A stretch of 63,900 nt of DNA, counting the filler, from Hausera hauseri (Eukaryota): NCBI GenBank assembly GCA_046269625.1. It is 12 parts of 12 records of this genome, joined end to end, with 100 filler letters (N's around TTAATTAATTAA, not from the genome) between each part and the next. Parts side by side here need not be neighbours in the genome. Positions count along the whole stretch, not along the records: positions 49,265 to 57,575 come from JBJURY010689882.1; 11 more parts are not named here. One strand, written 5' to 3'. Under the pieces are notes generated by a model. It ran no database searches, had not been told where the DNA came from, and was given only the letters and a program-made list of their open reading frames with translations. Positions 49,265-57,575 of this stretch are shown here, piece by piece (positions within the stretch are counted from its first letter, which is position 1; each line of letters begins with the position of its first letter). Both the position numbers and the translations under genes were made by a program.

Positions 49265-50040
49265 TAACTTTTGCTCAGCTCGTCACGCGCTATCGATATC
49301 ACTCGGTCCGAAGTCCATTGCTCGACCTCCTTTTCGGCCGGAGGGAGGTCATCTAAAAAATTTTAGTGAAATGTTCGAAATAGCCAATCAGGTGGGGAAA
49401 AGTGGTTAACGGACCAATCAGAGAAGTGCGGTGGAGTGGACACTTCTACCTACTATCATATTGACATAGACTTTTAACATATGATTTTTAACATAGTTTT
49501 TACAGTTCGTTTGTTCGTTCGGTTGCATTTTTCACCTGGATCCTTTCGTCTGATCGTGAGGCGGCTATATTATGAAATGCTCAACTTTTGATGGGCTACA
49601 TGCTCAACCCATTTCCACTGCCGTTTGATTTGTTTAAGGGGAAATTTTTCCCCTTCGAAATTTTCCCATTGACTTTTCCCCATGTTCCCATGGTCTGATT
49701 GAGTTGCAGCAGTGTTCATTGAATTCGCCGACATCGATTTACCTTTTGCAAACATTTTCTCAGTGCTAGCAACATGTTTCTCGTTACGCGTGACGCATTT
49801 CCTGTTTTGCTTGTTCCTCTTCTAGCGTCTCTCCCTTACATTTCTGTAAGCCGCACCGCTATTAACTTTTGCTCAGCTCGTTGAGCTCTACCGATTTGAG
49901 TCGGTCTAATGTCCAAAGCTTTCCCCCGGGGAGGGGGTTGAGAAAATTCGCGAAATGTGTGCATTGACCAATGAGATGCGGAGAATTGGTCGATTGACCA
50001 ATCAGAGAAGTGGGGTAGGGCTGACAGTTCTACCTACTTA
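49265..50040. repeat. Two diverged ~180-190-bp direct repeats with paired CCAAT motifs
   Basis: TAACTTTTGCTCAGCTCGT...ACCAATCAGAGAAGTG...TTCTACCTACT at ~49265-49454 and ~49863-50038. Confidence 0.7.
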
Positions 50041-50279
50041 CATGGCATGGTGCGCCATCTTATTGTAGGTACCATGGATTACTATTAGCAAAATAAATCT
50101 TCAGCTTGCGGAACTATTCTATACCTAATAACGTTACAATAAATTCCCTAATTCATGGACCCTTCACATTCATGAAGTCGTCCCGAATCCTGTCATGAAA
50201 TGCAACCCAAAATATAACTTTAATGGGTGTTTAACTGTTTGAACTATGTAACAGTGGTTAGTTTTTCACCCAGGAACCG

Positions 50280-50780
50280 TCGGAAAAAATGTGGAGTACG
50301 AGCTGACAATTGAGTACAGGTTTCATCATTGAAGATGACTTGTCTCCTATGCTTGTTGAATATTGAATATTCTATGGTTCAATTTTTTCGGTTACTAATA
50401 TGTTCGAGTAAATAGCTGCTTCCTTGCATGACGTCTAGCTGATCGGTTATTTTTGAACGAAACATTGCGTATTGTTCTCGTTGTAACTTGAGGGAGACAG
50501 GGTAAATCTTGTTGGATTTCTCTGGAAGTCAGATGTGGATTCATTTTGCTTTTCCTTATCATTATTTTGTCATGCCCACTAAGTTTTCCTTACGACCACA
50601 TCTCCTTCTTCCGTTTGAAACCATTGTGCCTTCATTTTTGAATTTGTGTATTAACTGTGTCACTGTGTGTTTGGGAATAGACAACCGTCTGTAAATGTCA
50701 TCTCCAGTCAATGCAAATTTATGTAACTCTTTGATTTCAGCTCGTTTTTCAACTGAAGTATCCCTTCTTCACAAAAAGAA
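50280..50780 (-). mobile_element. Tc1-like transposase N-terminal (HTH) remnant
   Basis: RRDTSVEKRAEIKELHK...IYRRLSIPKHTVTQLIHKFKNEG...RRRCGRK paired-like HTH pattern. Confidence 0.55.
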
Positions 50781-51999
50781 CAAGAATAACAAAAACTACT
50801 ACACTTGAACGTAAATAATCTATTACAAAGACAAGAAAAATCAAAATTTAGTACACTGCTTCGATTCATTTCAGTTTAATGCGAGGAGGCCAATGGTAAA
50901 AGAGATGTACCCGAGTTTTATCATGTTTATAAATATTTTTTTCAAAGTGAATTGTTAGTTAAATGTCCAACACCATTATTCAAGTACAAATAGGAATAAT
51001 TTTAAGGTGTTACCCATTTGCAATATATTAATACAAAATAAAGTGAACTATCTATCACATGTTTATAAATTCTATAACAAATTGTAATTGTAATTAGAGT
51101 AATTTCACAACCACCAGTAGACTGAATAACCATACAGTGTGTGTTAACTTGCAAGTTAACTTAAAATCCAAACAGTTGTCATGTTGTTTTTTTACATTGT
51201 AAAGAAAAACGACATTCGTTTCTTGCATTGTGAATTCAGCTTAATTTGAAATGTAGATGCAATATGTTAATTCTAATATTTAACATTTCAATGAAAAAGA
51301 AGGAATATATTCAGTTCTACGGAGTGTCTAAAAATTACGGTGACGCTTTTTTTTAACAATTTTACATAATAACATGTTTAAATCAATCAAAACAACATTC
51401 AAAGTACAAAATGGCCACTATTGATGTGAAATTCTGGGTTGTTCTTCTGATACCAATTGTTATTTTCTTTGTTGTATCCGAATAGTTCCTGAATTGACTT
51501 AGTTTTGAAGAATGAAACCACTATACCAGGGTTTATTGGGAGAGTTAACCCACCCCCAAAAAGGGTCGCATTCCTCCCAATACTGATAGCATAAATCATC
51601 GAGGGGGATTTGATTTTTAACGCCGGTACCATTCCAAATAAATTCTACGGTATAAAAAATCAGCTCTGGTAAAACGAATCGAATAAGTATCGCCAAAATT
51701 TTATTTCCGAAAACAGCGTAAAAATGGAGGTTTAAAATTCTCGAAGCAAAAATCTTTTTGCGAATTGAAACAAAATTTTTCTTTAGGTTTCTTTTCTGTT
51801 TTTTTAAAGAAAAAAATAGGTCGGGTAAATCGGTTGTGCAACACGTCTGCACTCGTCTATTATATACACTGAGCCTGAAATTACTGAAACTACTTTTTTT
51901 ATCTTTTTTGTTAATTGCGAACTTACGATACAACGTGATTCGGGTACAATTTAAAAAAATACAACGGTTAAATTTGTCATGAATTTTTGCAATTGAGCA

Positions 52000-54900
52000 A
52001 ATAATTTAAAGCAAATAAAATATTTTATTTCTTGAGTGAAATTGATTAATTAATTTTTTCTTTTGTCATTGATCTAAAACTAAAACTGAAGCTGAACCAA
52101 TTTCGAACATCTGTCCGAAAGGCACCCAGCCGCCAAACGTTTGTCGTCAGTGATGGCAGCGCCCGCAGCAGCGGTACCACATTACCCCCCCCCCTCTCGT
52201 AGCAAAAAGGCATTATCATAGGGAGCGGGAATGTGAAAAGAAAATCGCGAAAAGAATATGGGTTTGTGTTCTACTCGATTTTTGTGTGTACTATGCGTTG
52301 TACTTTGTCGATATATTGCTCTCTACTGTACTTTCTGTTTTTCTGTGGTGTGTTCATTTGCGGAGATGTACGTAGGGGTGAGAGCTTTGTCGTATTTCTG
52401 GGTTGATTGTTTGGTATTATTTTGGTTGAGGGAAGTGATCGTTGTGAAGAACGATTAATTGAGAAAGAAGTAGGGGAAGAAGGTAAGGAGTGAGAAGTTG
52501 AACATGACGAGTGAGGAGTAGAAAGTGGAGAATGTGAAGTGGAGTTGGAAAATGAGAGAAAGGGAGTAGGAACTGAGACGAGAGAAGCAGAAAGTGATGA
52601 ATGTGAAGTGGTGGATGGGACGTTAGTTGTAGAAGATGAGATGTGAGAGGTAACAGGTAAAGAATTGGAAGTAGGGGTGGAAACATTAGAAAGAAAAGTG
52701 GGAATTGGACCAGATGGTGGTTGATGATTTGTTGATTTAGCAGGGAACGGAGTAGAAACAAAAGAATCGAGAAAAGTGCCAGTGAAATTGGGGTTGTTTT
52801 GTGTATTATGAGGAGAATCATCCACGAAAAAGGCAGGTTTTAAATTGGTGATGTGAACGGTTTGTTCTTTACCGCTTCTAAGAATTGTAGCTGTGTGAGA
52901 CCATAACGAAAGCTGTTTGAATGGCCCAACGTATTGTGGTTGAAAACCACCAGCTGAAGAATTTCGAAACCAAACAAACTTGGCAGTATATGAATCATTT
53001 GGTATGTTTGATTTGTTATTGTTTACTATTTTGCAAAATGAGTCTTTGTTTAGTGACGAAGTCATTTTGGACATTTCGACTTAGTTCGTCTGTTGGTGAT
53101 TCGTCTAGATCAGTTAACTCAAAAAGTGCTGGAATTGGTGTACCAAACAATGCTTCCGCTGGTGCACAACCCGTGGTGGCGGAGGGTATGTTTCGGTAGC
53201 CAAGCAAAACAAGAGGTAGAAGAGTTGTCCAGTTGCTGTGTGATTCAGTTAGGATTTTAAGTGAGGTTTTCATTGTGTGGTGGAATCTTTCTAGAAAACC
53301 TTTCGCTTGGGGATGATATAGGGAGGTGTGTATGTGTTTGATTCCCAAACGATTGACTAAGGATTTAAAGAGGTTTGACTCAAATTGTGGACCTTGATCC
53401 GTGATTATGAAGCGAGGAGAGCCAAATCTGCTGATCCACATTTTGATGAAAACCTCAGCGATAGTGTTTGTCTTGGTGGAACGTAATAGAACGGCTTCTG
53501 GTTATCGAGAAGAACGGTCCGTCATGGTGAGTATGAATTGATGACCGTTGTCTGGACGAAGAGGGCCGACTAGGTCTATATGAACGGATTCAAAACGCGA
53601 CGTACAGGGGAAGTGATATAATGGTGGCTTCAGATGCTTGAGAGTTTTGAATTTTTGACATGCCACGCATTCCTTAACCCACGCCTGTACGTCTGATCTC
53701 ATCGACGGCCATATAACACTACGTTGCAGGAGCCGAAAAGTTGCTTTGGCACCCGGATGATGAAGAGAATGTACGTTATGAAATGCAATTTTCTGCAAAG
53801 ATGAAGACAAAATTGGTTTGCGATTACCGGGTTTAGAAGTGTCATAGGCAATGCCGTCAATGATTTGGTGTGATTTAAAGGATTTAAGAATATCCTGCAT
53901 TGATACATTTTGCTGAAGTACTGCTTGTGAGAAAATCGGACTGACTCCAATGATATTAACCGATCTCGACAAAAAATTGGCGACCAAATTGTCAGTGCCT
54001 GAAATATGTGCCATTTTAAAATTGAATGTCGACAAGTACGATATGTGACGTTCTTGTCGAGGTGAAGGAGTTTTCATATCCATGATGTGAATAAGAGGTT
54101 TGTAGTCAGTTTGGATTGTAAAGGACCTGGCAATTAACAAATGCGAGAAGTATTTTAAAGCTAATACTATCGCTAAGAGCTCTCTATCCAAGGTTGAATA
54201 ACGACTTTCTGGTGATGTAAGTTTCCGAGAATAAAATTCCAGAGGCTCGTTAACGCCAATAGAAATTTGATGCAGTATTGCGCCGACTGCTGTGGTAGAG
54301 GCATCTCTGGTTAATATTAGCTATGCGTCAGATTTGGGTTACGCTAGAATTTCTACAGTTTTTAAACTTTCACGTAAATGGTCAAACTGGTTGACACGTT
54401 CGGAAGTCCAGTGAATTAGTTGTTTCTTCTTTCCAGACGATAAAGAAGCAAAAGGTGCGGTTAACTCAGAGCAATGTGGCACATATTTGTGAACAAAGTG
54501 GAGTGTGCCAAGAAAAGAGCGCATTTTAGTTGTTGTTTGCGGCAATTGGATGTTCTTAAGCTGAGTTATGCGGTCTTGCTGAGGAGAGTGGCCAAATTTG
54601 GTGATAACATGACCAAGGAAATGGATTTTGTGTTGGAAAAATGGAACACTTGGCGAAATTTACTTCTAAATTATTTTGGTGGAGGCATTGAAAAACTATG
54701 CGTAAGTGCTCAGAATGTTGTTTGGGCGATGACAAAACGATGAGAATATCATCTATGTAAGGAAATGCAAAGTTTAGACCAGCGAGAATCATGTCTATGT
54801 GCCTTTGAAATGTTTGAGAGACACTACGTAGACCAAACGGCATGAAAACATACTCAAAAAGGCCGAAAGGTGTTGTCACAATTGTTTTTGGTATGTCAGC

Positions 54901-57575
54901 ATGTGAAACAGGAATCTGATGGTAGGCTTTATAAAGATCGATGGATGAAAATATGGTGTTGCCATTGAGTCTGTGTAGGATATCGCTGATGAGCGGTAGT
55001 GGATATGCGTCCATTACCGTAATGGTGTTCAATTGGCGATAATCGCCACAGGGCCTAAAGGTACCGTCCTTCTTGGGTACTACGTGTAGATGTAAGGCCC
55101 AATGTGACTTTGATCTTCTTATAATTCCTGTTTTTTCTAATTCATTGAACTCCGATTCCATAGCTTTACGTCTGCGTGGAGAAAGTGGCTAACCTTCTGC
55201 TTAACTGGTCTCTGGTGTTCAGTGACGATGTGATGGTACATCATAGAAGCAGGCTTGAAATTTGGGTCTTTCTTCAATGTTCTAGGACAAGAAATTGTGA
55301 TGTAGTCACGAAGAGCTGTATCTAGTTGCATTAATGGTGAGGTGAGATGAGAGGTTGTGTCGGTGTTGGCAACTATTTGTGTTGTTACTGTATGAATGGA
55401 GGCGTTACAATCGGAGTTATCAACAGTCAATTTATCTGATATGATAAAAAATTTCTTTAATATAGATTTCGGCGCTACATCCAACTGCGCAACAAGTGGT
55501 GCAACATTTTGTGCTCTTCTATGATTGATTGTACTTTTAATCACACGGTGCTGCCTGCAATAAACTAATAAGTTGTAGTGCAATAAAAAATCAGACCCTA
55601 AAATTGATGTTTTAATATCTGCAACAATGAACTTCCATTGAAAAACATCAGAAAAATGTGGCAGGGTGAAAGACATTTCTGCGGCACCAAAGATAAGTAA
55701 TGCTTGGCCATTTGCGGTGAAAGGTTTAGTAGACGTAGGGAGCATTTTTAGTGATGTGAAAGATGAAGGTAGTAATGAAACAGCTGCACCGGAATCGATC
55801 ATGAATTTGGTGTGATAAGGAAAAGATGTGAGTGCAGCATCTAATAAGAAAACGCTATTGGTAGAGGTACGGCAGTCAAAACGGAAAGAATGGCCTTTGC
55901 CAGAATTTGCCGTGGTTTCTGGCGGCTTTAGGCGTTTATTTAAATAGATGAAGATGTTGGAGTTTTCTTAGTGTAAAATTTGCATCCGAATAAGCAGCGT
56001 TCTGCATTGTCTTTAAACTTATTGTGATAGATGCAGACCGCATCATCTGACTGGAAACCTTGTGTATGGAACTAGCAGCCTATACAGCATTTTTTGGCAT
56101 TTCGATTGAATTTGGTGTGATAATGGCGCACCATTTGACGCGAAGGTGACTGGGCGTGCCTAGAGTTTGCAGACGATTGTCTGCTTCGATCCGCTATAAA
56201 ACGACTGCGACGCGGTAGAGCCAAAGCGTCAATTTTGCTAGAGATGGCCGATATGGCTTGATGTAGTGCCGCATTTTCGGCTTGCAGATTTTGAATTTGA
56301 CAGACTCTACTGTTCTCATTGTTTGGTGAGTTTACTGATTGTAGATGTGCAACTATTGGTGGTGATTACGTTGCTTGCGGAGCTGAAATCGATTTATGTG
56401 TATTATTGTTATGACAAATTTCGTAACTTTTGTCCGCAAGTTGCGCCAGTTTGTTGAGCGACGTAGTGTCCTTTACAACAGTAAGGAGTACACGGATTTG
56501 GATTGGCAGGGATGATAAAAAATAACGTCGAAGAAGATTTGCGTTATTTTGTTGGTTTATTCCTAGTGAGTTTAGTTGTGAAAGTGAGGTGCGAAGAAAT
56601 TCAGAGGGCTTTTGCTGGCCAAGAGCGTTTTCGTTGAAGTATTTTTGTATTATTGAGTTTAATGAAGGCTCGGTTGATTTAGTTACGGAGTCAAGTAGTG
56701 ATTTGTATGGATCAGCATAATTAAAAATGTCAGAAACTTTAGTTATGCCGGATTTGATATTAGGTGGCAGATGAAGAAGTAGACTGTTGGCCTTTTGAAA
56801 CAAATCAGTGATTTTATGTGAGGTTAGCCACTTTGTGTGGAAGTCTAGCCATGTTCTGCAAGAGTTTTGACTATCGAAGAAAAAATCAACACATTGAAAA
56901 TGTGAGAAAGAAGATGGAGTTGGAGAAACAAAAGTTATGTTTGGGGATTGTTTTATGTCCTCAGAGTTGGGGTCAGAACCACCACGAAGTTTAGGAATTA
57001 GATGAAGCGAGAGAGATGAAGAATGTGGTTGAAAAGGGCATAGCAGATCGTCGGGGTGAATAATGAGTCCATTTAGAAATAGAGAGAAACGAGAAAAATG
57101 GACGTCATTGCGGATTGAGGTGTATATATGTTGACCTAATGTTTTGTGATTTCCGATGTGTGTATGAATATGTCTATTTAAAAAAAAGATGAAAATAGTA
57201 AAGGAATTGATCAGTAAGCTTGGGGTACAGTGCGCCGTAACGAGCGCGGGCGCACCAAGACTTCCAGCGAGGCAACACTCGGGCCCCACAACAGGTACGC
57301 CACGAGTCCAGACAGCCACCCGACAACTTCCGATCGGTCGGAACTCGTGTTTATATAAATTTTTCGCCAATGGATTTTTTAGTGACATCTTTAACTTGGA
57401 CTTCCTATTATACTTTAATAAACTCTTGTATAAATGAATATTTTCTGGAAAACGACTCAAAAAATAACATGTGGTTGAATGAATGCTTGAAAATAACGTG
57501 TAGAAGATATTCTGGGAGTTTTGACTTTGGAGACCATCGCTATATAACGGAAGCAAAATTAGAACTTTGAGCATA
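52000..57575 (-). mobile_element. Family A copy 5, most complete: leader-UBL-gag-PR-RT-RH-IN-tail-PPT-3' LTR (LTR starts 52181, far end uncertain)
   Basis: All domains in Ty3/gypsy order: IDSGAAVSLLP, CGDYRQLN, PYIDDIL, DRELLAI, H..HHPG / CVAC, ITDQGPQFES, YVGPFK; G-run PPT at 52184-52197. Confidence 0.95.
56366..57574 (-). CDS. gag: Open frame: leader - UBL (56978-57202) - Gag capsid; frame open essentially to the contig end
   Basis: FTIFIFFLNRHI...FSLFLNG...SLSLHLIPKLRGG followed by Gag LGQQKPSEFLR...LLRRYFLSSLP...LNKLAQLADK (CsRn1-type). Confidence 0.85.
   Translation of the reverse strand: MLKVLILLPLYSDGLQSQNSQNIFYTLFSSIHSTTCYFLSRFPENIHLYKSLLKYNRKSKLKMSLKNPLAKNLYKHEFRPIGSCRVAVWTRGVPVVGPECCLAGSLGAPALVTAHCTPSLLINSFTIFIFFLNRHIHTHIGNHKTLGQHIYTSIRNDVHFSRFSLFLNGLIIHPDDLLCPFQPHSSSLSLHLIPKLRGGSDPNSEDIKQSPNITFVSPTPSSFSHFQCVDFFFDSQNSCRTWLDFHTKWLTSHKITDLFQKANSLLLHLPPNIKSGITKVSDIFNYADPYKSLLDSVTKSTEPSLNSIIQKYFNENALGQQKPSEFLRTSLSQLNSLGINQQNNANLLRRYFLSSLPIQIRVLLTVVKDTTSLNKLAQLADKSYEICHNNNTHKSISAPQAT

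What the first reader, a model, noticed from the sequence alone, without database searches (positions are those of the whole stretch)
56978..57202. Family A Gag is fused behind a ubiquitin-like domain ending in di-glycine: candidate DUB-processed retrotransposon polyprotein
Seen in three strongly diverged copies on separate contigs: a 71-77-aa unit with a hydrophobic first strand (SIFFFLINKH / TIFIFFLNRH / TFVSFFYQNKH), a central F-x-L-x-x-(N/H)-G and termini HLNIHFRIRGG (GG ends 1525), SLHLIPKLRGG (56978) and IRITPRLFGG (41251), each followed directly by a Ser/Thr linker and Gag capsid. Known: linear ubiquitin/UBL fusions (ribosomal fusions, Sde2) are cut after GG by deubiquitinases, and pestiviruses use captured ubiquitin/UBL inserts as processing signals. 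Inference: the element uses a host DUB rather than its own protease to release Gag with a defined N-terminus (S or M), and the freed leader-UBL-GG might be conjugatable or act as a decoy. Retention of GG amid high divergence argues for selection.
Basis: partly seen in the sequence, partly recalled or inferred. Interest (0 to 1): 0.9.

Follow-up and report, generated by a model that had tools for sequence, protein, structure and literature searches.

The report
Ubiquitin-derived module fused before retrotransposon Gag
A decayed Ty3/gypsy retrotransposon carries a 76-residue, strongly diverged copy of ubiquitin ending in Gly-Gly directly in front of its capsid protein, and the same fusion is found throughout a whole clade of related elements, which suggests these elements rely on host ubiquitin-cutting enzymes to release their capsid.

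Summary
On the minus strand, window 57205..56978 encodes a 76-aa unit ending KLRGG. It lies in one 402-codon open frame, followed by a disordered Ser/Pro linker and an all-helical Gag. Downstream lie broken PR, RT, RNase H and IN genes.

The unit alone matches nothing in Pfam or PDB. Its Gag relatives settle the question:
- 35 of 39 with enough upstream sequence carry the same unit.
- All 51 non-redundant units end in GG, with tail consensus (R/K)-(L/I)-x-G-G, and Pro never follows.
- Some relatives carry near-canonical ubiquitin at this position. L004's unit aligns with ubiquitin without gaps over 76 residues.
- A profile of only the diverged units finds the canonical-like ones at about 1e-11.
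- A profile built without the window unit or its close kin scores the window unit at 19.4 bits; shuffled versions reach at most 6.7.
- AlphaFold2 predicts a beta-grasp, and the best Foldseek matches are ubiquitin (TM about 0.8).

The most likely mechanism is a linear ubiquitin fusion cut after GG by host deubiquitinases. This frees Gag from a stop-free but otherwise unconstrained leader. Cleavage is inferred, not shown.

I found no report of this architecture in LTR retrotransposons. I rate it a new variant of a known kind.

The parts
57206..57574 (-). Leader: 123 codons in the Gag frame, open up to the edge of the piece. In-frame ATGs at 57574 and 57387. Start codon unknown.
   Evidence: no stop in this frame, against 6 and 4 stops in the other two frames of the same stretch. 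No Pfam match. No similarity to the region after the polypurine tract, so it is not shown to be LTR.
56978..57205 (-). Ubiquitin-derived unit (UBL), 76 codons, ending KLRGG.
   Evidence: alignment in register with ubiquitin-like units of relatives; 19.4 bits against a leave-out profile; beta-grasp, pLDDT 80-95; Foldseek ubiquitin, TM about 0.8, rmsd about 2 A; 20 of 76 residues identical to the real ubiquitin of L004.
56978..56983 (-). The Gly-Gly codons: the proposed cleavage junction, with Ser as the next residue.
   Evidence: G75 and G76 are two of only six invariant columns in alignment A1. 51 of 51 non-redundant units end in GG.
56897..56977 (-). Ser/Pro/Thr-rich linker between GG and the Gag core.
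   Evidence: AlphaFold2 pLDDT below 50 for model residues 83-102. The length varies from 13 to 47 residues among relatives.
56369..56896 (-). Gag capsid core (all-helical, FFxD box at its start), closed by an in-frame stop at 56368..56366.
   Evidence: 254 homologues; DUF7041 weak in the window, strong in relatives; ten helices, pLDDT above 90.
56072..56224 (-). Remnant of the nucleocapsid zinc knuckle (HxKFxxxAKKCCIGC), in another frame. The first Cys position of CX2HX9CX3C reads Arg.
   Evidence: Relatives have two CX2HX9CX3C knuckles. This is the CsRn1-clade signature per PMC2582038.
55137..55802 (-). Protease-region ORF (by position; no Pfam match).
   Evidence: It is collinear with the L003 pol ORF.
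54556..55161 (-). Reverse transcriptase.
   Evidence: Pfam RVT_1, 4e-29.
53502..54191 (-). RNase H end plus integrase zinc-binding domain.
   Evidence: Pfam RT_RNaseH 5.5e-11 and Integrase_H2C2 4.2e-16.
52271..53441 (-). Integrase core and Ser/Thr/Pro-rich C-terminal tail, in two overlapping ORFs.
   Evidence: Pfam rve and rve_3 below cut-off. The tail contains 47-nt direct repeats (D1).
52185..52198 (-). Polypurine tract (GAGAGGGGGGGGGG), followed by TAATGTGG; possible start of a 3' LTR.
   Evidence: Read directly. Inferred only: no matching 5' LTR is present in the piece.

Best explanation
The unit is a captured and strongly diverged ubiquitin, built into the first open reading frame of a CsRn1-like (CHCC-Gag) Ty3/gypsy retrotransposon as leader - UBL - GG - linker - Gag. 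Shown: the homology to ubiquitin, the fold prediction, the fusion architecture across a whole Gag clade, the invariance of GG, and the ubiquitin-like tail (R/K)-(L/I)-x-G-G. Inferred: host deubiquitinases that normally process polyubiquitin and ubiquitin-ribosomal fusions cut the peptide bond after GG. That would release Gag with a small N-terminal residue (Ser here) without needing the element's own aspartic protease. It would also discard the leader, which has to stay stop-free but is otherwise almost unconstrained. The window copy itself is a dead copy with pol broken in several places, but it still shows the design.
For: The window unit is in frame and in register with the units of its relatives.

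Link to ubiquitin:
- Relatives with the same Gag carry Pfam-significant ubiquitin at the same junction: P0081 80 bits, P0063 37 bits, P0014 31 bits.
- L004's unit aligns with ubiquitin without gaps over 76 residues (110 bits).
- The family profile hits PDB ubiquitin at about 4e-11.
- A profile without the canonical-like rows still finds them at 1e-10 to 4e-12, and a leave-out profile finds the window unit at 19.4 bits.
- AlphaFold2 predicts a beta-grasp with and without the canonical rows, and the best Foldseek matches are all ubiquitin.

Distribution and junction:
- 35 of 39 relatives with at least 110 residues upstream have the unit, always ending GG 13-47 residues before the Gag core.
- Over 51 non-redundant units, P1 and P2 are Gly in 51 of 51, P4 is L/I/V in 50, P5 is R/K in 44, and P1' is never Pro although Pro is common at P3'-P5'.
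- UBL dN/dS is 0.13-0.5, so the unit is under purifying selection, but less so than Gag at 0.03-0.13.
- UBL-bearing Gags form a clade with support 0.92.
- L003 shows the complete order IN-end, LTR, PBS, leader, Ub-Gag, PR-RT-RH-IN.

Leader: its frame is open for 63-268 codons in 14 of 18 copies, while the other frames carry 4-28 stops.

Precedent: ubiquitin inserted in pestivirus polyproteins, even with an N-terminal extension, is cut by cellular ubiquitin C-terminal hydrolases (PMC8310069).
Against: - No cleavage has been observed; this is sequence inference only.
- The window unit has lost most of ubiquitin's lysines and much of the Ile44 surface (20 of 76 identities to a real ubiquitin). 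Recognition by a ubiquitin-specific DUB is therefore not guaranteed.
- The start codon is not identified. Most copies lack Met at ubiquitin position 1.
- The window copy is decayed, so nothing can be said about present activity.
- The relatives come from unnamed metagenome or ENA contigs, so host taxa are unknown.
Confidence: 0.72

Rival explanations
1. The UBL is a permanent, uncleaved domain of Gag, like the UBL of Ddi1 or Rad23. It would dock Gag or its precursor onto ubiquitin receptors (proteasome, ESCRT, shuttle factors), and GG would be kept for structural reasons.
For: The fold is retained under purifying selection. The ubiquitin surface residues are poorly kept in the diverged units, as in many integral UBL domains. 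From general knowledge (not checked here), ubiquitin fused in cis to retroviral Gag can substitute for a late domain.
Against: To my knowledge, integral UBL domains do not as a rule keep a C-terminal GG. Here GG is 51 of 51, the tail keeps the R72/L73-like residues, Pro is absent at P1', and a disordered linker follows. Canonical ubiquitin at the same junction would be cut by ordinary DUBs.
Confidence: 0.12
2. Cleavage occurs, but the selected product is the released leader-UBL-GG. It would be an element-encoded ubiquitin variant that is conjugated to targets, or that acts as a decoy for host E1, DUBs or ubiquitin receptors, as proposed for baculovirus ubiquitin.
For: The R72-like and L73-like positions and GG, which matter for E1 and DUB recognition, are kept. 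The lineage seems to have renewed the module with fresh ubiquitin.
Against: The UBL evolves fast and the leader is nearly neutral. Lysines and the Ile44 patch are not kept in the window unit. The one constant is the junction with Gag, which points to processing rather than to a conserved interaction surface.
Confidence: 0.1
3. The unit is untranslated 5' leader that happens to be open in the Gag frame, and the GG and the ubiquitin resemblance are coincidence.
For: The unit alone has no Pfam or PDB match. There is no ATG at its start. The only direct PDB hit was inflated by a vector tail.
Against: Profile and leave-out tests, the fold prediction, 51 of 51 GG, dN/dS below 1, real ubiquitin at the same site in relatives, and the stop-free frame.
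Confidence: 0.02

Closest known systems
Ubiquitin or UBL insertions in cytopathogenic pestivirus polyproteins (BVDV Osloss, CP1, CP Rit)
   Same: A host ubiquitin sequence captured by an RNA-templated replicon sits directly upstream of a viral protein and serves as a processing signal cut by cellular ubiquitin C-terminal hydrolases. In CP Rit the ubiquitin also carries an N-terminal extension (PMC8310069).
   Different: In pestiviruses these are sporadic, recent recombinants with unaltered ubiquitin. They release a non-structural protein and attenuate the virus. Here the module is an old, fixed and strongly diverged part of a whole retrotransposon clade, and it precedes the structural protein Gag.
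Cellular linear ubiquitin fusions (polyubiquitin, Ub-eL40, Ub-eS31)
   Same: 76-residue ubiquitin with an RLRGG tail fused head-on to a cargo. The family profile aligns to these chains over the whole unit. Release by DUBs is established knowledge.
   Different: The cargo is a retroelement capsid. The unit is preceded by a variable leader instead of starting the protein. The sequence has drifted to about 26% identity.
Sde2 (UBL-GG precursor cut by DUBs)
   Same: A diverged UBL ending in GG is removed from the N-terminus of a functional protein by DUBs (general knowledge; not checked here).
   Different: No sequence relation was tested. After cleavage Sde2 exposes a Lys that is used by the N-end rule pathway, whereas here P1' is mostly Ser, Ala, Gly or Asn.
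CsRn1 clade of Ty3/gypsy retrotransposons (CsRn1, PwRn1, Boudicca, Kabuki)
   Same: Gag with the unusual CX2HX9CX3C knuckle, and a Gag that matches no cellular protein (PMC2582038). The relatives of the window Gag carry this signature twice.
   Different: The description of that clade read here mentions no ubiquitin-like leader. The clade's tRNA-Trp PBS is not demonstrable in the window, and the metagenome relatives use a tRNA-Leu-like PBS.
Ddi1/Ddi2 (UBL plus retropepsin-like protease)
   Same: A ubiquitin-like domain joined to a retroelement-type protein.
   Different: In Ddi1 the UBL is an integral domain next to a protease, not a GG-terminated unit in front of Gag.

Membership tests
Ubiquitin family (beta-grasp, Pfam PF00240) | Significant sequence similarity to ubiquitin | tested here: met
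   Not met by the window unit alone (Pfam and PDB blank). Met through the family: A1 profile against PDB ubiquitin at about 4e-11; the diverged-only profile finds canonical-like units at 1e-10 to 4e-12, and a leave-out profile finds the window unit at 19.4 bits.
Ubiquitin family (beta-grasp, Pfam PF00240) | Beta-grasp fold (b-b-a-b-b-b) | tested here: met
   AlphaFold2 gives strands 2-8, 11-18, 40-44, 47-49, 64-71 and helix 24-35, with pLDDT about 90. The topology is the same without canonical rows. Foldseek finds ubiquitin at TM 0.79-0.84 and rmsd 1.8-2.6 A. This is a prediction, not a solved structure.
Ubiquitin family (beta-grasp, Pfam PF00240) | About 76 residues ending in Gly-Gly | tested here: met
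   76 codons, KLRGG.
DUB-processed linear ubiquitin fusions | Ub/UBL directly N-terminal of the cargo with GG at the junction | tested here: met
   Window; 35 of 39 relatives; 51 of 51 units end in GG.
DUB-processed linear ubiquitin fusions | Ubiquitin-type tail (Arg72, Leu73) and no Pro after GG | tested here: met
   The window has K-L-R-G-G then S. In the family, P5 is R/K in 44 of 51, P4 is L/I/V in 50 of 51, and P1' is Pro in 0 of 51.
DUB-processed linear ubiquitin fusions | Actual cleavage after GG by a deubiquitinase | not testable with these tools
   Needs expression or in-vitro cleavage.
CsRn1 clade of Ty3/gypsy elements | CHCC Gag signature CX2HX9CX3C | tested here: inconclusive
   Relatives have it, mostly twice. 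In the window only one remnant is left, in another frame, with Arg at the first Cys position.
CsRn1 clade of Ty3/gypsy elements | tRNA-Trp primer binding site TGGTGA(G/C)CCCG(T/A) | tested here: inconclusive
   One match with 2 mismatches at 57257..57246, but about one such match is expected by chance, and no LTR pair was found.
CsRn1 clade of Ty3/gypsy elements | Placement by RT/pol phylogeny with named members | not tested
   No named reference sequences were available from the tools.
Integral UBL-domain proteins (Ddi1/Rad23 type) | UBL kept as part of the mature protein, with no conserved terminal GG | tested here: not met
   GG is invariant and followed by a disordered linker.

The most novel reading that the evidence does not exclude
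A whole lineage of LTR retrotransposons has outsourced the N-terminal maturation of Gag to host deubiquitinases and has taken up host ubiquitin more than once. Evidence for repeated uptake: near-canonical ubiquitin is nested among elements whose UBLs are about 20% identical to it, and there is a separate UBL-bearing pair in the DUF7041-type Gag clade. The released leader-UBL-GG would itself be active on the host ubiquitin system, either as a conjugatable variant or as a decoy.
Probability: 0.15. Interest if true: 0.9.

Novelty: new variant of a known kind. Interest (0 to 1): 0.78.

Why it matters
Gag of LTR retrotransposons and retroviruses is thought to be matured by the element's own aspartic protease. 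A fixed ubiquitin-GG junction in front of Gag would mean that a large group of elements depends on a host enzyme for this step. That is a new point of host-element dependence and of possible host control.

It also provides a natural series of ubiquitin variants, from about 80% down to about 20% identity, that all keep (R/K)-(L/I)-x-G-G. Such a series is a ready-made test of what DUBs minimally need in a substrate. It would also explain how an element can begin translation in sequence dictated by nucleic-acid signals (LTR, PBS) and still make a clean capsid protein.

The prediction is directly testable with simple expression constructs.

Tried and rejected
- Pfam and PDB searches with the window unit or the whole ORF alone gave nothing usable. 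The single weak PDB hit to ubiquitin was boosted by a chance match of DPNS to a vector tail.
- The search for homologous proteins with the 402-aa ORF found nothing. With alignment A1 it returned only one already known protein.
A2 worked.
- LTR search: there is no direct repeat between the 5' 370-700 nt and the rest of the piece by repeat finder, blastn with word size 7, or local alignment (score 28 against a shuffle maximum of 31). The 5' LTR is therefore not in the piece, and the leader is not shown to be LTR.
- The candidate tRNA-Trp PBS is no better than chance.
- No tRNA genes.
- The G+C-rich stretch in the leader folds no better than shuffles (z = +1.27).
- The codon-phase test of the leader chose the UBL frame in 14 of 14 loci, but stop-free random sequences do the same. 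It adds nothing beyond the absence of stops, and I rejected it as evidence.
- Monophyly of the canonical-ubiquitin elements on the Gag tree is not rejected (AU p = 0.29). More than one renewal within that group cannot be claimed.
- Eight literature searches found no earlier description.
Full report
**What is in the piece.** The piece 49265-57575 carries one Ty3/gypsy-type retrotransposon on the minus strand, cut off at its 5' side by the edge of the piece. From the edge downward it contains:
- a 402-codon ORF (57574..56369, stop at 56368..56366);
- a zinc-knuckle remnant in another frame (56224..56072);
- a protease-region ORF;
- reverse transcriptase (Pfam RVT_1, 4e-29);
- the RNase H end plus the integrase zinc domain;
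- the integrase core and a Ser/Thr/Pro-rich tail ending at 52271.

All pol parts lie in separate frames, so pol is broken in several places. A polypurine run at 52198..52185 follows the integrase stop. No LTR pair is present in the piece.

**The observation.** It ends in KLRGG, and the Gly codons are at 56983..56978. The Gag frame is open for 402 codons, while the other two frames of the same 1.3 kb hold 27 and 24 stops. After GG comes a Ser/Pro/Thr-rich stretch, and then the Gag core.

**Is it ubiquitin-like?** On its own the unit matches nothing in Pfam or in PDB sequences. The one weak PDB hit of the whole ORF aligns LHLIPKLRGG with ubiquitin's LHLVLRLRGG, but it owes part of its score to a chance match to a vector tail.

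The decisive evidence comes from relatives. An exhaustive HMMER search with the ORF found 254 Gag homologues. Those that extend far enough upstream show the same kind of unit, always ending in GG just before Gag. In several relatives the unit is recognisable ubiquitin by Pfam's own threshold, directly upstream of the same Gag domain (DUF7041): P0081 at 80 bits, P0063 at 37 bits and P0014 at 31 bits.

A scan of metagenome contigs with a sub-family alignment returned 18 loci. All 17 in which the region is present have a 76-residue unit ending in GG. In L004 the unit aligns with ubiquitin over 76 residues without a gap (110 bits, Met1 present).

The profile results are:
- The profile of alignment A1 (window unit plus Gag with 28 relatives) hits single ubiquitin chains in PDB at about 4e-11.
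- As a control, a profile of the diverged units without the canonical-like rows still finds those rows at 1e-10 to 4e-12.
- A profile without the window unit and its three closest kin scores the window unit at 19.4 bits (E 0.009 for a PDB-sized database), against at most 6.7 bits for 500 shuffles.

**Fold.** AlphaFold2 on A1 gives a beta-grasp for residues 1-76 (strands 2-8, 11-18, 40-44, 47-49, 64-71; helix 24-35; pLDDT about 90). It gives a disordered linker (residues 83-102, pLDDT below 50) and an all-helical Gag with pLDDT above 90. Rebuilding the alignment without the near-canonical ubiquitin rows gives the same topology with pLDDT 80-92. Foldseek against PDB returns ubiquitin chains as the best matches (target-normalised TM 0.79-0.84, rmsd 1.8-2.6 A, about 76 columns, about 20% identity).

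**How general, and how constrained?**
- Among the 156 proteins held, 39 have a complete Gag N-terminus and at least 110 residues upstream. Of these, 35 carry the unit, each ending in GG 13-47 residues before the Gag core.
- Over 51 non-redundant units, P1 and P2 are Gly in all 51. P4 is Leu/Ile/Val in 50, P5 is Arg/Lys in 44, and P3 is free.
- The residue after GG is Ser 23, Asn 6, Ala 6, Gly 5, Met 5, Thr 3, and never Pro, although Pro is frequent three to five residues further on. P2' is Asp in 27.
- This is ubiquitin's own R-L-R-G-G tail reduced to the part that DUBs need.
- Between related loci the unit changes faster than Gag (23-66% against 61-86% identity), but dN/dS stays below 1 wherever dS is not saturated: 0.13-0.5 for the unit against 0.03-0.13 for Gag.
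- On a Gag tree the UBL-bearing sequences fall into one clade (support 0.92; 53 with UBL, none clearly without). That clade includes the window copy with P0001, P0002, P0003, P0005 and P0006.
- The other large clade has short N-termini and no UBL, except the sister pair P0032/P0063.

**Anatomy of an intact relative.** L003 reads: integrase end, LTR, a tRNA-Leu-like PBS (TGGTGTCAGAAG...), leader, ubiquitin-Gag with a single in-frame stop, then PR-RT-RNase H-integrase in one 817-codon ORF. In most loci the Gag ORF runs 293-294 codons beyond GG.

**The leader.** In the window the frame is open for 123 codons upstream of the unit, up to the edge, against 6 and 4 stops in the other frames. In 14 of 18 copies it is open for 63-268 codons, against 4-28 stops in the other frames. 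In several loci the open frame runs through the PBS.

Most copies have no Met at ubiquitin position 1. It is Phe or Ile in the canonical-like ones and Met only in L004. The leader has no Pfam match and evolves almost neutrally (dN/dS 0.3-0.9). A codon-phase test that seemed to favour the UBL frame in 14 of 14 loci proved uninformative once it was compared with stop-free random sequence.

My reading, which is inference, is that translation starts at variable upstream AUGs, that the leader only has to remain stop-free, and that the ubiquitin junction removes it.

**Mechanism.** The best-supported model is a linear ubiquitin fusion processed by host deubiquitinases after GG. The architecture, homology, predicted fold and junction conservation are shown. 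The cleavage itself, and the purpose of the design, are inferred. That purpose would be release of Gag independently of the element's protease, removal of an arbitrary leader, and possibly the expression-enhancing effect known for N-terminal ubiquitin fusions.

The closest documented case is the ubiquitin insertion of cytopathogenic pestiviruses. There cellular ubiquitin C-terminal hydrolases create the N-terminus of NS3, also when ubiquitin carries an N-terminal extension (PMC8310069).

Three rivals were weighed and are listed with their odds: a permanent UBL domain, a released UBL that is itself the effector, and chance.

**Renewal of the module.** Identity of the units to the real ubiquitin of L004 is bimodal: 38-50 of 76 residues for L001, L003, L009, P0028 and P0081, and 13-23 of 76 for all others, with the window unit at 20. 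On a careful Gag tree rooted with P0024, P0027 and P0041, the canonical-like elements sit in a nested clade (90/93). Elements with diverged units branch off below them, and those units share the derived FYLSxxxKYLNxS motif. One origin of the canonical-like state is not rejected (AU p = 0.29).

This pattern suggests that an old, diverged UBL was replaced at least once by fresh host ubiquitin. The P0032/P0063 pair in the other Gag clade suggests a further independent acquisition. Both remain inferences that depend on the rooting.

**Family assignment.** The relatives carry the CX2HX9CX3C knuckle that defines CsRn1-clade Gag (PMC2582038), mostly twice. The window keeps only a damaged remnant. The clade's tRNA-Trp PBS cannot be shown in the window. 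The paper read on that clade states that no relative of its Gag could be found and mentions no ubiquitin-like part.

**Novelty.** Follow-up reading of four of those papers added none. The library does not cover subscription journals or Repbase notes, so I allow roughly a one-in-five chance that it has been noted somewhere. The principle of ubiquitin as a host-cleaved processing signal is known. Its fixed use in front of a retroelement Gag appears to be new, so I rate it a new variant of a known kind.

**Limits.**
- The host organisms of all relatives are unnamed.
Broken genes were read through only with X at the breaks (L003).

Noticed in passing
L004:193-420, L001:1491-1718, L003:2015-2242, L009:4500-4727: Near-canonical ubiquitin (38-76 of 76 identities to L004's unit) sits at the same junction in elements nested, on the Gag tree, among elements whose units are only 13-23 of 76 identical. 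The distribution is bimodal, which suggests that an old UBL was replaced by fresh host ubiquitin.
   Followed up: partly
proteins P0032 and P0063: A sister pair inside the otherwise UBL-free DUF7041-type Gag clade also has a GG-terminated ubiquitin-like unit (Pfam 18 and 37 bits) before Gag. This may be an independent acquisition.
   Followed up: partly
L001:1274, L003:1598, L007:1979, L013:706, L014:2759 and others: A conserved tRNA-Leu-like primer binding site (TGGTGTCAGAAGTGGGAT...) lies 186-500 nt upstream of the ubiquitin unit. In several loci it is inside the open frame, so the frame that leads into ubiquitin-Gag runs through the PBS.
   Followed up: partly
window 57206-57574 (-) and the leaders of L001-L018: The frame upstream of the unit is stop-free for 63-268 codons in 14 of 18 copies, although its amino-acid sequence is almost unconstrained and most copies lack Met at ubiquitin position 1. 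The true start codon is unknown.
   Followed up: partly
window 50395-50562 (-): A short ORF with a weak, below-threshold match to the Tc3-type transposase HTH (PF01498, E 0.0014). It is probably a fragment of a Tc1/mariner element downstream of the retrotransposon.
   Followed up: partly
window 49265-49459 and 49863-50043: Two pairs of direct repeats (58 and 97 nt, 74-78% identical) spaced about 590 nt apart at the far end of the piece. They are an unidentified repeat unit, unrelated to the finding.
   Followed up: no
window 52475-52674: Four copies of a 47-nt direct repeat inside the Ser/Thr/Pro-rich C-terminal tail of the integrase ORF.
   Followed up: no
proteins P0002/P0151, P0014, P0020, P0022: Long ENA gene models join unrelated upstream parts (for example CNOT1 and Rrp44 domain pieces in P0002) to the UBL-Gag. 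These look like chimeric gene predictions that swallow the retrotransposon ORF.
   Followed up: no
window 56366-56368 and 56225-56365 (-): In this copy Gag is closed by an in-frame stop, after which similarity to relatives continues in the same frame. The zinc-knuckle remnant lies in a different frame, so the capsid-nucleocapsid region is broken at least twice.
   Followed up: partly
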